DNA from: Haliotis cracherodii
Taxonomy: Eukaryota
Reading direction: 5' to 3'
NCBI RefSeq assembly: GCF_022045235.1
Contig: NW_027266308.1
Span: 35,526,001 to 35,590,000, forward strand
Length of the DNA: 64,000 nucleotides
In this document: positions 1,881 through 62,453 of the stretch, in pieces
Position numbering within the stretch: position 1 is the stretch's first letter
How the letters are laid out: each line of letters begins with the position of its first letter
Made by a program: the position numbers and the translations under genes
Notes under the pieces: model-generated
Told to the model about the DNA's origin: nothing
The model's database searches: none
The model's input: only the letters and a program-made list of their open reading frames with translations

Positions 1881-2695
1881 ATGACAAACTTACCTCCCCA
1901 TCTGCTTCAACCCCTTAGCATCGACACCAACATCACCTACGACCTGGATATGTCCAAGTTCCCAGGTCTGGACGACCCTCAACATATGTACCAGCCTGCT
2001 CTGTTGATAGCCACTGACTGGAGCGACTACGTCAACCACGACACGCAGTGTGTCACACGTGACGCAGATATAAATCGTGTTCCAACTATTCTTGACGATC
2101 ATGGTTATCTTCAAGGTATGTTTAGATTGTGATGCGCCCTCTTTGCTTTGCTTGTATACCTTTTGTTAAATGGCTGTATATCGAAGTTAATCGAAGTAGG
2201 ATGTTGGTAAACGAAGGATAATTAATCTTTTCTTTTTGTATTTTTCGACACAAGTAAATAATACAAGACTTCACATGTATTAATATCATGATTTTATCTT
2301 CAGATTCCAACCAGAATTTGTTCTCCGACCTTGACCCCAGTAGTGCTTTGGATAGCAACACGTTCCAGTTCATATTGGATGACGTCGTTGAGGAACTGTC
2401 ATTTTCATATGACAATACATTCTCTCAAAATACGCGTGTGAACACAGATCTTTCACCTAGACGAGATGTGGGAAATTGTGATTTAGATTGCTATCTTGAC
2501 ACAGTATATGGGATCTCTGCCGATGGGTTACCAGCTGTGGCGTCACGTGTTAGAGGACAGAAAAGACTCCGATCTGCTGTTGAAGATGCTGATACCAGAA
2601 AGAAATCAAAGTTGACGGACGATTCATCAGTTCTTCCCTCCAATGTGCCTGTGTGTTCAACATATGGACATTGTGATTTATCCAGACTGTCGTGA
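1881..2695 (+). CDS. G1: uncharacterised 'LDMSKFPGLDDP' family protein, subfamily A, 208 aa; exons 1881-2115 and 2304-2695
   Basis: ATG at 1881 (cacaATG). Donor CAAG|GTATGT after 2115; acceptor ttttatcttcag|AT before 2304. The phase-1 join G|AT restores the frame of ORF 2288..2695. Same structure in 6 paralogues. Confidence 0.85.
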
Positions 2696-5600
2696 TCACA
2701 TGTTTGAATTAATCAATCACCATGCTTTAATGTAAACTCGCAAAGAGTCAGTGTGATCAGAGGTTCCTAAGAAACAAATCTAGATTGACCGCATAGGAAA
2801 CAAACGTACAACTAGTGCTAGACGTGAATACTACAGTTATACAACTTCCTTATGTTATCTTTACCTTGTTGTTGTCGTTTTGTTGTTTACTGAAATATAT
2901 GAATATGACAGAATATATTTAGTTATGTCTTGTTTACCATGCATCCTGTCTGGTTAAAACCCCTCCTTTCCAATCTACGTGCACTTGCGAGCCATGTTTC
3001 ATCTGGCTTGTTATATAAGCAATACAGCAACATCAGGTTAAAAAGACAGATGACGAAAGAAAAAGTTCAAGTGAAATGTCTTTTAAAATAATCTTTCTTA
3101 AGGAACATTTATTTGTTGAATATAAAATTTCTAAATTTATGTCAATATAAAACGTCAACGCCAGAGAATGGTCTCGATTTTCTGCCAACACAGATTCGTT
3201 TTGCAAATTGCAAACTAGTGATGAAAACCATATGAAAGAACCACTGAAAACCAGTGATGACACCAGCCACTCGTTGAGAAGTGTAAGCATGTCCTGCTCC
3301 ACCGGTACCACCCACCACTCACACACGTTGCAAGTCAGAGATTGGTTGGTTCCCAACGCCGCTCCCTTGAGTTATACTAATATTTACGCGTTGTATGCAG
3401 ATGAACTTACAGTTCAGATACAGTACTGGAAATATCTCTAATGACATCTGTGAATGAATGGAGATGAATCCTATTTGGAACATTAATATGTAATTTCACA
3501 GCAATAGGTCATCACGCAATGCAAGTGACAATGGGTTAGGAGGCGTAGTCTCTCTTGCAGAAACCAGAGCATGTATGTAATGAAACATCTACCCCCTTAT
3601 CACCCGTCCTAACTCTAGCAGTCTGTATTATGTCCGTTCTTAGCTGGGTTCCTTAATACTCTATGGTTCCCTAATAGAATGGTTGTTATTTAACCTTATA
3701 CATGGTTATATTTCAGGAACGGAATGTTAGTCTTAAGGAAGATATTAGATCAATGGTTATTCGATCAATTGATTGACTGATACACTAAATACACATTTTT
3801 AATGTCATGAAAAACATGCTTCATGGACCTCTGTACAGTTAAGCACCGCTGATGGCTGAAATGGATAGGTGACCGTGTTCCGCACCTTGATTCCTGAGAA
3901 TGTCTCGGACTTTGTGCCCCATACTGAAATGGGGTGTCTCCTAGGGACAGCGACGGTGTTCGAAATACGTCTCTCTTCACTCAGCAGTGAATGGGTAGCC
4001 AGTGGAATGAGAGGGCAATGTGACTTTTGACCTTCTAGCACCACACACAGACAGCAGCTTAGATTGTAAACTCTCCAGGGAGCTGAGAATGAAAATCGAG
4101 TGTTTATGAAGCACCTTAAATACATTATCATACTAGGTGTTCGCGATGAGTTGAGTGTACACCTGTGTCAACTATCAAAAACACATGCAAAGGCCAGTCA
4201 AATGTTCCCCTGAAAGAACACGGGAACATTATGGTACAAGTCAAAGGACATTGCAGCGGGCATCATCTTTACCCCTGATGCTACAAATTTGGAAATGCCA
4301 TCCACATGCCTACCATGAAACGTATTGAAAGCTTTACTAAGGCCTTGAATGTTTTAGCCTTGATCAAACTTAGGATAAACAGTGGAAGGGGATGCCTATT
4401 TCAGCAATATTGGACGATTTTAGATCATCGATATACCTGAAATTAAACCCCTGGGCATATTACCTTGTTTTCACTTTGCCAATCCTATTCATATGCAGAA
4501 AGAAACAGATCAGCAAGAAGAGGCGCATAATTGGTGCCCGTGATGATGCTTGCTCTAGTCTAAATGTCTTACCCTCAAAATGTACATATATGTTAATGAG
4601 GAAGTCCACCATGTTACGTATTGTTTTCTCATTAAACTCCGGCTTGCATTTGCTTTAATTTTCTTACAAATTGCCCGAAACTGTATCTGTGGTTACCACG
4701 TTTTGTCACAAAAGCCCCATGGATCACCGAATGAAGTGTTTCCTGAAGTTTGTAATGCGGGATAGTGGTACAAAGTTGAAAAATCAAACGTTAGACAAAA
4801 CTTGGTTTCTTTCTGAGATTGTAAAACGCAAGCAAATCCTTTGATTTTTGAGAATCCACGTGCTATTAATTCCACTTGTCTCAAATACTTTCTGTAAATA
4901 TAAAGAGAGTCAAGGCTTTCGTGGTACTTTTGCTGGACCCAGCAATATATCTCTCTTTTTACAGATTTTGAATCCAGTAAAAAGATGAATGAACATGTGT
5001 TCATGTATAAGAGTGAAGACAATGGTTGATAGTACTGTTGCATGGTTTTGGCAGACTTCTTCCTCAGTTACGAAACTGGCCTTATACTAAGTGCTTCGGT
5101 CAAACAATTGATGTAGTGATGCTTGCATATACTGGTTATATTATTTGAGGCTTTGTGATTGGGAACAGCTACAAACTTTGCATGTAGACTTTGGATGACG
5201 GCTGGCTGGGACAAAATGGGTTCCAGATATTTTTATGTCACACTTTCCCCGAAGGTTTTCACTCTCATTACAGTGTGGGCTAAAACGCATTGCCCTTACA
5301 ACATGTCTTATTGTTTAAGTGCAATGTGCTTGGTGCTTAATTAACTATCGTTAACTATTGTTAATTAATCGTAACGCCGTGTATGTTTGTTCTCAGGGGC
5401 AGCTTTATCGTACGAGAACCAATGTGTGGATAGTAATCGTTTAATGATCCTCCTAATCCTCATAGATATTGTTCAATCCCTTAATCCATCTCAAATGTCA
5501 GTCGAACTAGAAAATCTTGGATTATATCCAACGCTTCACAGATTAAATGCTTTGTCATTCTAATCCATTCAGGATCGTGAGAAATAAGTGCAGTAATCGA

Positions 5601-6367
5601 TTATGATCCCTCGCGCTGGAGAAACACAACCAAAAAAATAATTGGATATGTCAACTCTCAACTTAACTCATTTATTTCTCGAAAACCCACCCACGCTTGT
5701 ACATGAAATGCTAATTAATTTGACTAATTGTTATGCACATGATTAATACATATCGAGAGGCCTTTTAGATCTCTTAAACTGTTAGTGGTGAGAAAATTCT
5801 TAAAATGGAAACAGATTTGGAAACTTATGATATAATATATTAAGAAATCAGTAAAGCGATGAAAGTAATGAAACTCCTCTCCTCCAGTAATTGAATTGGA
5901 ATGTAAACATTAGCGGTCTTTCCTGGGAAACGCTTAGTGCCAAAACCTGCAAGGCAATTTTACAGCTGCGTAGTAATGTTTTATATAAAGCCTAATATAT
6001 TTTTTAATTTGCATATATGTTGAACAGAATTTTATCTTCGATAATGTTTTTAAACTATGATTATACTACTTCTAGTAGTTTGTCTCTCATAACTCCAATA
6101 GGAGTGGCTCATTTTATTTTATTTTATGTTATTTTTATAGCATTTTATATGTAAATTAAGGCGAGACATAAATAAACTATCTGTCTGTCTGGGAATGTTC
6201 AGCCATCGACCGGTTTCACCGGGTACCCTGTGACATTGATTTTGAGAGTAATAAATATTATTTTAAAAGAAAGGTTGATTCTTTAGGAACAAGCAAATAC
6301 GACCCCTTAGAGCTTCAATCAACAGCTGATTTCTAATTTTTAAGGAATTGAAGTCTGTGTATATTTT

Positions 6368-60929: not shown

Positions 60930-61106
60930 GGGGGCACGGGTGGCCCACTCGTCTAAGGCGCCGTGATTCGCTGTGCAGAGTTGCGTCCCTTGGGCACGCC
61001 AGAAATCTATGATTGTGGGTTCGCATCCCGGTTCCCCCCGATTATGTTTCTAGGTTTGTCAGCACCATACTCGTCCTCGTGGGTTTCACCAAACTCACTC
61101 ACTCAC
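60930..61106 (+). mobile_element. SINE family 3 copy, internally deleted, 12-bp TSD
   Basis: TSD TCAGACAGTGAA at 60918-60929 and 61107-61118; lacks about 100 bp present in the 20084 copy. Confidence 0.85.
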
Positions 61107-61638
61107 TCAGACAGTGAATGCCCTTGGTCCACTAACAGACATCCATTTTCGAAACGAGCTGTACCAAGTTTTTTAAATGTATGGAAACTATCAATATGGG
61201 CACCTCTTTTAAGGCCAGTGTTTTAAAATGTTTACTTTCCGGCACCTTTCTCGTTAGAACACGCATAACAACTATGAGAAAAACACATATTTTTTAAGAA
61301 ATCTGGTTTATTTAAAAAAACAATAAATCAAATCAACAAATGTAAATATGTAACAATATGTATGGCACCATAAGTCCTCGTATTATATAAATATAAAAAT
61401 AACATCTCTAAAAAATCCCTTTTGGGTATTGCACAAGAAGCCACATGGCTTCATCTATCTGAATGCTTCATTCATCCTTGTCCGCATGAAATACAACACT
61501 GGGTGTTCGCATTTCACATCACTATTTCATAGTGATTCATAAACACATGCTCATGATATACTGATAGTCGGTACAGCATAAGGGACTCAGCATTTATCTT
61601 ATGATAATAGAATTGGTTTGTCACTTGTGATTGAAAGT

Positions 61639-62453
61639 CTATGACTCTCTGCCAATTCCACCATTCTTGGATTCGTGACACAAATTTACCACCAAATAAG
61701 GTAACGCTTGCGTGAATGACTCCATCATCTTTGATCTTTTTTCAACATCCGGGTAACAGGCGTCATCGGAGAGACGTCGCTTTTGACCTCTACCGCAAGT
61801 TCTAGCAGAGAGTAATTCTTCCATGACCGGGGAAGAGGTTAATCTAATGTTGGGGGTTGTATGGTCTGTTTGTTGAGAATCACTTGTTGACAGGGAACTT
61901 TGACTGTCAGTATCCAAGTCAATTAATCCAAATATGTCACTTGGTATCACTGAATCTGCAATGACGTCATCGAGGAGTGTCTGCATGGTAATGTCGTCGA
62001 CAGCGAAACCTTGGTCTGTCAGCAAGGCATCAGTTGATTCTGTAAGAAAAAAGAGCAGTTCATAAGTAATTTTGTTCACTATAGGATCATTTTCAAAATT
62101 ATATGCATAAGCACATGAAAAATGAATCATGTAGAAAACGTAAAATTTTTTTTTCATTATCCGTTACTTTTACGTTCAGATTCTGGTGACAACGTATACA
62201 TACCTATAAGAGAGTATAAATCGCTTTCTAAGACACCGTCCGATTCATGGGAACTTGAAGCACTGTTTGCGTCATGTGTGACAAGCTGAGCGTCATGGTA
62301 GACGTAGTCGCTCCAGTCAGTGGCTATCAACAGAGCAGGCTGGTACATATGTTGAGGGTCATCCAGACCTGGGAACTTGGACATATCCAGATCGTAGGTG
62401 ATGTTGGTGTCGATACTTAGAGTTTGGAGGAGATGAGTAGGTACGTCCATCAT
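61639..62453 (-). CDS. G7: same family, subfamily A, 216 aa; exons 62453-62204 and 62039-61639
   Basis: MMDVPTHLLQTLSIDTNITYDLDMSKFPGLDDP... Donor ATAG|GTATGT; acceptor ttttcttacag|AA; 164-nt phase-1 intron; in frame with ORF 61639..62157. AATAAA at 61312-61307. Confidence 0.85.

What the first reader, a model, noticed from the sequence alone, without database searches (positions are those of the whole stretch)
1920..62414. A 114-nt exon-1 core is almost invariant at the DNA level across paralogues whose second exons barely align
Seen: the codons for IDTNITY...DWSDYV differ between G1 (1920-2033, +) and G7 (62414-62301, -) at only 2 of 114 nt, both synonymous, and between G1 and G4 (34485-34372) at 6 of 114. 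The blocks TGGATATGTCCAAGTTCCCAGGTCTGGA (28 nt) and CAACATATGTACCAGCCTGCTCTGTTGATAGCCACTGACTGGAG (44 nt) are identical in G1, G2, G4, G5 and G7. Introns, flanks and exon 2 of G1, G4 and G7 are strongly diverged. Variants form a patchwork: G2 differs from its twin G1 at Pro CCA (shared with G4/G5) and Ser AGT (shared with G4/G5/G7). Protein-level selection alone does not freeze third codon positions. Inference: recurrent short-tract gene conversion, even between inverted copies 60 kb apart, keeps a constant N-terminal module while the C-terminal halves diversify. The alternative is an overlapping DNA/RNA-level element.
Basis: partly seen in the sequence, partly recalled or inferred. Interest (0 to 1): 0.82.

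Follow-up and report, generated by a model that had tools for sequence, protein, structure and literature searches.

The report
Gene conversion homogenises abalone exon-1 core
A cluster of small, uncharacterised black-abalone genes keeps one short stretch of its first exon nearly identical by copying it from gene to gene, while the rest of each gene drifts apart. This is a clear but ordinary case of concerted evolution.

Summary
The window carries seven two-exon genes of a 25-member family. All 25 lie on one Haliotis cracherodii scaffold. Five window copies, and 11 copies genome-wide, share a 114-nt exon-1 core. G1 and G7 differ at 2 of 114 nt and G1 and G4 at 6 of 114. The 28-nt and 44-nt blocks are identical in five copies. 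Promoters, introns, exon 2 and 3' flanks of the same pairs sit at random-alignment level.

The best explanation is two processes together. Strong amino-acid selection acts on a mollusc-wide N-terminal motif. Recurrent short-tract interlocus gene conversion acts on top of it.
- Between old lineages, exon-2 synonymous sites are saturated (pS 0.66-0.91) while core pS is 0-0.26.
- In young duplicates, core dS equals exon-2 dS, so synonymous sites are not constrained.
- Distant paralogues keep the peptide with saturated synonymous change.
- Mosaics are explicit: the b488 block is b597-like; the G4/G5 tract runs into the promoter; G5 carries a G7-type patch reaching into its intron.
- PHI p = 0.0012, and core GC3 is raised.
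- The exon-2 lineages predate the split from H. asinina.

No RNA structure, Rfam family or small RNA was found. The assembly is unpolished HiFi, and other species' data show the same multi-copy core. Cross-species nucleotide data were too shallow for the species-clustering test. This scan has already noted other gene-conversion cases in this genome.

The parts
1881..2695 (+). G1: two-exon gene (exon 1 1881-2115, phase-1 intron 2116-2303, exon 2 2304-2695; 208 aa). Core at 1920-2033.
   Evidence: Canonical GT..AG. G1-type tandem array with G2 and four copies left of the window.
12841..13655 (+). G2: recent twin of G1. Core at 12880-12993.
   Evidence: 92.6% identity to G1 over 1.6 kb. Core dS 0.04 against exon-2 dS 0.05.
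27196..28080 (-). G3: old paralogue (247 aa). Homologous core region at 27931-28044, 68% identical to G1.
   Evidence: Orthologue in H. asinina. 13 of 20 same-amino-acid codons differ synonymously from G1.
33706..34524 (-). G4 (225 aa). Core at 34372-34485.
   Evidence: Exon 2 is orthologous to an H. asinina group.
34339..34859 (-). G4 side of a 521-nt G4/G5 tract at 93% identity. It runs from 335 nt upstream of the ATG through the core. The G5 side is 40896-41408.
   Evidence: -374..+147 at 93.3%, against 76.7% for the rest of the two genes. Core dS 0.04 against exon-2 dS 0.26.
40073..41081 (-). G5 (222 aa). Core at 40929-41042. Chimera: G4-type 5' part and exon 2, G7-type exon-1 tail.
40740..40892 (-). 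G7-type patch in G5 (approximate limits): exon-1 tail, splice donor and first part of the intron.
   Evidence: G5-G7 88.8% over -39..+226; alignment.
40646..40661 (-). Relic of the G4-type exon-1 end, now inside the G5 intron. The counterpart in G4 exon 1 is 34293-34308.
49077..50162 (-). G6: old paralogue (289 aa). Homologous core region at 50013-50126.
   Evidence: Identical to XP_071081095.1.
61639..62453 (-). G7 (216 aa from the ATG at 62453). Exon 1 62204-62453, intron 62040-62203, exon 2 61639-62039. Core at 62301-62414.
   Evidence: Equals XP_071080488.1. A transcript contig of a related species spliced across 62039/62204.

Best explanation
The seven genes belong to a 25-member, mollusc-wide family of small, probably disordered nuclear proteins. 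Each has a conserved N-terminal motif, an acidic middle and a C-terminal bipartite nuclear-localisation-like signal. Amino-acid selection keeps the N-terminal motif constant. Within one subfamily of 11 copies, the homology this preserves lets non-allelic recombination copy short stretches of about 100-500 bp from one gene into another, on either strand and over distances up to about 110 kb. Repeated events keep the synonymous sites of the core young, while promoters, introns and exon 2 diverge to saturation. Exon 2 evolves under relaxed or diversifying selection. Shown here: the rate contrast, the mosaics, the recombination signal and the absence of synonymous constraint. Inferred: the mechanism itself (heteroduplex repair, GC bias) and the idea that flanking divergence limits tract length.
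For: 1. Rate contrast. Between lineages, exon-2 pS is 0.66-0.91 (dS above 1.6 or undefined) while core pS is 0-0.26. Adjacent exon-1 codons have pS 0.45-0.52 against 0.19 in the core, and core dN is 0.01.
2. No synonymous constraint where no conversion is needed. Core dS against exon-2 dS: G1-G2 0.04/0.05, G1-b506 0.09/0.06, G1-b500 0.39/0.33. In distant paralogues 54-63% of same-amino-acid codons differ synonymously.
3. Mosaics. b488 is G1-type everywhere else, yet in -26..+150 it matches b597 and not G1 at 15 sites against 2 (p = 0.002). The G4/G5 5' tract is 93% identical against 77% for the rest and enters the promoter. The G7-type patch in G5 enters the intron and leaves a relic of the old exon end.
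4. Recombination signal. 106 of 300 informative site pairs fail the four-gamete test; PHI permutation p = 0.0012.
5. GC content. Core GC3 is 0.63-0.76 in the subfamily, against 0.22-0.41 in the exon-1 tail, 0.38-0.48 in exon 2 and 0.39-0.53 in five of the six distant cores; the sixth, b608, has 0.66.
6. Age of lineages. The exon-2 tree pairs G4/G5 and b597 with separate H. asinina proteins (SH-aLRT 99), so these lineages predate that species split.
7. A derived variant. CCT (Pro) in G1, b517 and G7 is absent from all contigs of three related species, so it is derived and shared by non-sister paralogues.
8. Not an artefact. The assembly is hifiasm on HiFi reads without polishing, QV 62 (PMC9709981). 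In other species' contigs the summed contig depth over the core is 5-34 times the single-copy depth, depending on the run, and contigs break there.
Against: The species-clustering test with nucleotide sequences of a distant Haliotis could not be run. The species reached are only about 1-4% diverged and show one difference in the core, which is compatible with both models. Core dS between some lineages is 0.25-0.39, so homogenisation is episodic and not complete. Raised GC3 also occurs in one distant paralogue (b608). The single species-specific amino-acid site (His in H. cracherodii, Gln in two H. asinina lineages) is weak evidence. The 3' and 5' limits of the block are similar in many pairs, which selection on a sequence element could also produce.
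Confidence: 0.8

Rival explanations
1. A nucleotide-level element overlaps the core and selection freezes its synonymous sites. Candidates are a structured RNA, a small-RNA source or target, an overlapping frame, or an exonic enhancer.
For: The block limits are similar in many pairs, and the core is far more conserved than neighbouring codons. A microRNA-type target site cannot be tested with these tools.
Against: Core dS equals exon-2 dS in young duplicates, and b500 carries 7 synonymous changes. Distant paralogues show saturated synonymous change with the peptide kept. RNA fold z-score is -0.83. No Rfam match lies in the core. No read of a small-RNA run lay on the G7 locus, although the tool itself warns this is no test. 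Some tracts include promoter or intron.
Confidence: 0.06
2. One or a few old segment replacements (exon shuffling or unequal crossing-over) gave each lineage the same exon-1 block. The block has simply diverged since, without recurrent conversion.
For: The block tree is a star with short branches. Core dS of 0.2-0.4 for several pairs would fit a single older event.
Against: Core dS ranges from 0 to 0.39 among pairs of equally old lineages. Tract end points differ. At least three separate events of different age are identifiable: b488/b597, the G4/G5 5' tract and the G5/G7 patch. Site incompatibilities lie inside the block. The block is an internal patch with both flanks diverged, which a crossover does not produce.
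Confidence: 0.1
3. Assembly or consensus artefact: the copies were made alike by collapse or polishing.
For: None found. The finding's span holds two N gaps.
Against: HiFi reads with hifiasm, no polishing step, QV 62.8. The copies differ at patchy sites and have unique flanks. RefSeq proteins of H. rufescens and H. asinina carry the same peptide. Contigs of three other organisms hold the core words at multi-copy depth.
Confidence: 0.02

Closest known systems
Interlocus gene conversion limited to part of tandem paralogues, e.g. mammalian TLR1/TLR6 (PMC2077338) and GOT1 paralogues of Tigriopus (PMC3728101). Both papers are known to me only from the titles and abstracts.
   Same: Neighbouring paralogues, a homogenised stretch inside otherwise diverged genes, and islands of divergence that persist beside it.
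   Different: Here at least 11 copies take part, on both strands, over up to about 110 kb. The homogenised stretch is only about 100-190 nt. It coincides with a short N-terminal motif of an uncharacterised, probably disordered protein.
Concerted evolution of the VERL repeat array in abalone (Swanson and Vacquier 1998; recalled from memory, not checked here).
   Same: Same genus. Homogenisation within a species of repeated coding units.
   Different: VERL units are tandem repeats inside one gene. Here separate genes with their own promoters exchange a short patch.
Conotoxin precursor genes: conserved signal region with few synonymous changes beside a hypervariable mature-toxin region (recalled from memory, not checked here).
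   Same: Mollusc multigene family with a constant N-terminal segment that is conserved at silent sites and a fast-diverging C-terminal part.
   Different: No signal peptide here. The proteins carry a bipartite nuclear-localisation-like signal. In this family young duplicates show normal synonymous rates in the constant part.
Earlier gene-conversion findings of this scan in the same genome (s1-820427 phosphatases, s1-831980 receptor pore segment).
   Same: Patchwork homogenisation of a conserved segment between clustered abalone paralogues.
   Different: A different gene family, a shorter tract and more copies.

Membership tests
Interlocus gene conversion / concerted evolution in a clustered gene family | Paralogues lie close together on one chromosome | tested here: met
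   All 25 members are on scaffold C45: 21 within 35.40-35.65 Mb and 4 at 6.72-6.74 Mb.
Interlocus gene conversion / concerted evolution in a clustered gene family | One segment has much lower synonymous divergence than the rest of the same gene pair | tested here: met
   Core pS 0-0.26 against exon-2 pS 0.66-0.91 between lineages. Introns and flanks are at the random baseline.
Interlocus gene conversion / concerted evolution in a clustered gene family | Segments of one gene have different nearest relatives (mosaicism) | tested here: met
   b488 block (15 against 2 sites, p = 0.002). G4/G5 5' tract and G5/G7 patch.
Interlocus gene conversion / concerted evolution in a clustered gene family | Statistical signal of recombination among copies | tested here: met
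   106 of 300 incompatible site pairs; PHI permutation p = 0.0012.
Interlocus gene conversion / concerted evolution in a clustered gene family | Paralogues of one species cluster together against their orthologues at the nucleotide level | tested here: inconclusive
Hints only: a derived CCT shared by G1, b517 and G7, and His against Gln in two H. asinina lineages.
Interlocus gene conversion / concerted evolution in a clustered gene family | GC enrichment of the converted tract (GC-biased repair) | tested here: met
   Core GC3 0.63-0.76 against 0.22-0.48 elsewhere in the same genes. This is supportive, not specific.
Functional RNA/DNA element overlapping coding sequence | Synonymous sites constrained wherever the element is present | tested here: not met
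   Young duplicates: core dS equals exon-2 dS. Distant paralogues are saturated.
Functional RNA/DNA element overlapping coding sequence | Stable or known RNA structure, or small RNAs from the site | tested here: not met
   z-score -0.83. No Rfam match in the core. 0 small-RNA reads on the locus, a weak test.
Mollusc-wide uncharacterised protein family (no Pfam model) | N-terminal motif of the type LQPLxIDTxIxYxLDMSKFPGLDDP..QPALLIA, recognised by a family profile | tested here: met
   Profile search: 54 representatives at E<=0.001. Named sources are Haliotis species, Lottia, Mizuhopecten, Pinctada and Mytilus, all 'uncharacterized'. No Pfam family.
Mollusc-wide uncharacterised protein family (no Pfam model) | C-terminal bipartite basic signal (KR..10-12 residues..K/R-rich), taken as a nuclear-localisation signal | tested here: inconclusive
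   The pattern is present in all 22 modelled members and in the database homologues. Nuclear import itself was not tested.

The most novel reading that the evidence does not exclude
Homogeneity of the N-terminal module is itself favoured. On this reading the subfamily is a 'constant docking motif plus diversifying C-terminal half' system. Conversion keeps every member matched to one shared partner, or to one shared RNA-level regulator, while exon 2 is driven apart by diversifying selection. Conversion would then be more than a passive by-product of retained homology.
Probability: 0.15. Interest if true: 0.55.

Novelty: new member of a known kind. Interest (0 to 1): 0.3.

Why it matters
It is a clean, quantifiable example of how a short conserved motif can seed and sustain gene conversion among many diverged paralogues, including inverted ones. 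It also warns that core-based trees or dating of this family would be misleading. In addition, it brings to light an uncharacterised, mollusc-wide family of small proteins with a very strongly conserved N-terminal motif and fast-evolving remainder. That family is expanded to 25 genes in black abalone, and its function is open.

Tried and rejected
- Pfam on the exons and on ten full-length homologues gave nothing above threshold.
- The ESM Atlas gave no usable hit; its stored model is disordered, with pLDDT 0.38.
- A word-based protein search with G1 exon 2 gave nothing, so G1-type genes seem unannotated in the database. With exon 1 it gave one ENA fragment.
Only every other 10 kb of the cluster's intergenic DNA was read. 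The whole-genome census still covers all members.
- A scan of JGI metagenome contigs for relatives gave none.
- RNA structure and Rfam were negative.
- The small-RNA run put 0 reads on the G7 locus, which the tool itself calls no test.
- The block tree is a star and cannot order events.
- Spliced (joined) protein models were not sent to any search tool. Exons were searched apart, and database proteins were used where full length was needed.
- A transposable-element origin is rejected: the core occurs only in the two clusters.
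Full report
WHAT IS THERE

The window is G000:C45:35526001-35590000 of a 1.18-Gb, 80-contig genome. RefSeq proteins of Haliotis cracherodii that lie on a contig of exactly the length of C45 are identical to my models of G6 and G7. 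The genome is therefore the black abalone reference.

The window holds seven small two-exon genes:
- G1 1881-2695 (+)
- G2 12841-13655 (+)
- G3 27196-28080 (-)
- G4 33706-34524 (-)
- G5 40073-41081 (-)
- G6 49077-50162 (-)
- G7 61639-62453 (-)

Each has a phase-1 GT..AG intron of 141-340 nt. There is no other ORF of 220 aa or more in the window.

A profile of exon-1 peptides finds 25 members in the whole genome, all on C45. Twenty-one lie between 35.40 and 35.65 Mb, on both strands, and four lie at 6.72-6.74 Mb. I modelled 22 of them; all are intact and 189-308 aa long.

THE OBSERVATION

The 28-nt and 44-nt blocks are each present exactly five times, where none is expected by chance. G1 and G7 differ at 2 of 114 core positions, both synonymous. 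G1 and G4 differ at 6.

For the same pairs, the upstream 300 nt, intron, exon 2 and downstream 300 nt give 60-66% identity. This was measured in a global alignment whose shuffled baseline is 64.6%. BLAST finds no similarity between lineages except a block from about -40 to +150 relative to the core start.

Genome-wide, 11 copies share this core: b488, b500, b506, b517, G1, G2, G4, G5, G7, b597 and b637 (named by position). Among them 16 of 114 core sites vary, against 27 of 36 in the codons just upstream. However, the similar block is about 190 nt long, and 'almost invariant' is true of some pairs only. Between-lineage core pS is 0-0.30, with a mean of 0.19.

THE GAPS

The N run at 17235-17561 lies in DNA that has no other copy in the window. 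It is 3.6 kb beyond the G2 stop and 9.6 kb from G3. The run at 62905-63037 lies 452 nt upstream of the G7 start. No gene and no compared segment touches either gap. I did not try to fill or size them.

GENE CONVERSION OR NUCLEOTIDE-LEVEL CONSTRAINT?

First, between old lineages exon 2 is saturated at synonymous sites (pS 0.66-0.91). The core of the same pairs has pS 0-0.26.

Second, the core is not constrained at silent sites. Where two genes are young duplicates throughout, core dS equals exon-2 dS: G1-G2 0.04 against 0.05, G1-b506 0.09 against 0.06, and G1-b500 0.39 against 0.33. The intron of G1-b500 is 24% diverged.

In the distant paralogues (G3, G6, b399, b455, b608, b615) the peptide motif is kept. 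Yet 54-63% of codons with the same amino acid differ synonymously. An element that freezes third positions would not behave like this.

Third, the genes are mosaics.
- b488 is G1-type in promoter, intron, exon 2 and flank. From -26 to +150, however, it is 96% identical to b597, an inverted copy 109 kb away. There it matches b597 and not G1 at 15 sites, against 2 the other way (sign test p = 0.002).
- G4 and G5 are 93% identical from 335 nt upstream of the ATG to +147, but 77% identical in the rest. Core dS is 0.04 against exon-2 dS 0.26.
- G5 carries a G7-type exon-1 tail, donor and intron start. A relic of the G4-type exon end lies stranded in its intron at 40646-40661.

Two of these tracts include non-coding DNA, which points to DNA exchange and not to selection on a coding or RNA element.

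Fourth, inside the block 106 of 300 pairs of informative sites show all four combinations. Incompatibility rises with distance (PHI-type permutation p = 0.0012).

Fifth, core GC3 is 0.63-0.76 in the subfamily. It is 0.22-0.41 in the exon-1 tail, 0.38-0.48 in exon 2 and 0.39-0.53 in most distant cores. This is as expected from GC-biased repair, although b608 is also high.

Sixth, the lineages are old. In a tree of exon-2 peptides, G4/G5 pair with one H. asinina group and b597 with another H. asinina protein (SH-aLRT 99 each). G3 and b615 also have H. asinina partners, and G7, G6, b637 and b455 have H. rufescens partners. The cores of G7, b597 and b488 differ by 0-1 synonymous site. That is far less than lineages older than this species split should show.

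EVIDENCE FROM OTHER DATA SETS

Core words are held by runs of four coded organisms. I laid three of them on window:61400-62900.

Contigs of organism B are 0.9% diverged over the exon 2 and intron of G7. Contigs of organism D are 3.7% diverged, and those of organism C are about 4%.

A contig of organism C joins 62039 to 62204, skipping 164 nt with GT..AG on the gene strand. This contig is therefore a spliced transcript, and the G7 intron model is confirmed in a relative.

Over the core, the summed contig depth rises above the single-copy level in all three runs: from about 9 to 140-315 in organism B, from about 8 to 43-102 in organism D, and from about 9 to 46-58 in the transcript contigs of organism C. 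Single-copy contigs end inside the core. The multi-copy identical core is thus seen in independent data.

The only core difference carried by all contigs of B, C and D is at 62355, where they read CCA and the reference reads CCT. CCT is therefore derived in the black abalone. It is shared by G1, b517 and G7, which are otherwise unrelated copies. This fits a recent transfer, although a parallel mutation is not excluded.

With species only 1-4% apart, one silent difference is what either model predicts. The cross-species rate test therefore has no power here. In addition, 65 lesser differences were not listed by the tool.

A small-RNA run of the same species put no read on the locus, which the tool itself rates as no test.

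Two H. asinina lineages have Gln where all black-abalone subfamily members have His. This is a single-site hint of concerted evolution.

NO OTHER ELEMENT, NO ARTEFACT

The exon-1 RNA folds no better than shuffles (z = -0.83), and Rfam has nothing in the core.

The reference assembly was made from 37x HiFi reads with hifiasm, without short-read polishing, at QV 62.8 (PMC9709981). Homogenisation by polishing is therefore not a plausible cause.

WHAT THE GENES ARE

There is no Pfam family, and the stored model of one homologue is disordered.

A profile search finds 54 representatives. The named ones are 'uncharacterized' proteins of Haliotis species, Lottia, Mizuhopecten, Pinctada and Mytilus.

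Common features are:
- the N-terminal motif;
- an exon-1 end of the type DDLxxLI;
- an acidic LLDDV-type stretch;
- a C-terminal pattern KR/KRKR, then 10-12 residues, then a K/R-rich run. I read this pattern as a bipartite nuclear-localisation signal from general knowledge; it is untested.

Exon 2 of young duplicates has dN/dS 0.5-0.7, against 0.03 in the core.

VERDICT

I would put the causal order differently. Amino-acid selection keeps the module, as it does across molluscs without any nucleotide identity. The homology thus preserved lets conversion recur within the subfamily.

This is a well-documented kind of process, and this scan has already reported several cases in the same genome. 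It is a new member of a known kind and of moderate interest.

NOT DONE
- Joined spliced models were not searched.
- The decisive cross-species nucleotide comparison therefore remains to be made.

Noticed in passing
window 1755-1790 (G1), 62540-62580 (G7), and the 260 nt upstream of the ATG in 20 of 22 family members (loci L001-L020, L024, L029): The promoters cannot be aligned between lineages. Yet 20 of 22 carry an inverted CCAAT box (ATTGG on the gene strand) 70-190 nt before the ATG, while only 3 carry CCAAT in the other orientation. Nine genes have two boxes 31-34 nt apart (two of them a third box 38 nt further upstream), often followed by TTTAAA or TATAAA. This looks like a conserved NF-Y-type promoter grammar. 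From memory, double CCAAT boxes at this spacing are typical of cell-cycle genes. That link is untested.
   Followed up: partly
window 61517-61560: About 40 nt in the 3' flank of G7 reach a summed contig depth of about 200,000 and 82,000 in the two large DNA runs of related species. Thousands of contigs run on into unlike sequence on both sides. This is a fragment of a very abundant short repeat.
   Followed up: no
G000:C45:35488613-35538841 (b488, b500, b506, b517, G1, G2): The six G1-type genes form a same-strand array with 5.6-12.4 kb spacing. None of them found a database protein with exon 2, whereas G6, G7, b637, b645 and a6724 are RefSeq models. The G1-type genes seem unannotated.
   Followed up: partly
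H. rufescens XP_046372979.2 (P0002) against G7, residues 55-56: The red-abalone orthologue of G7 reads Pro-Cys where black-abalone G7, b597 and b488 read Gln-Leu. That is at least three nucleotide changes in two adjacent codons between close species, which looks like another small conversion tract just after the core.
   Followed up: no
window 6367-6490: Nearly two copies of a 65-nt unit that is itself an internal palindrome. It may be a small foldback or MITE-like element.
   Followed up: no
run table (X1 against X2-X4): Only the probable source sample holds all 9 sampled words of the G7 core. Three other individuals of the same species label hold 0.78. The G7 core haplotype may therefore be polymorphic in the species.
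   Followed up: no
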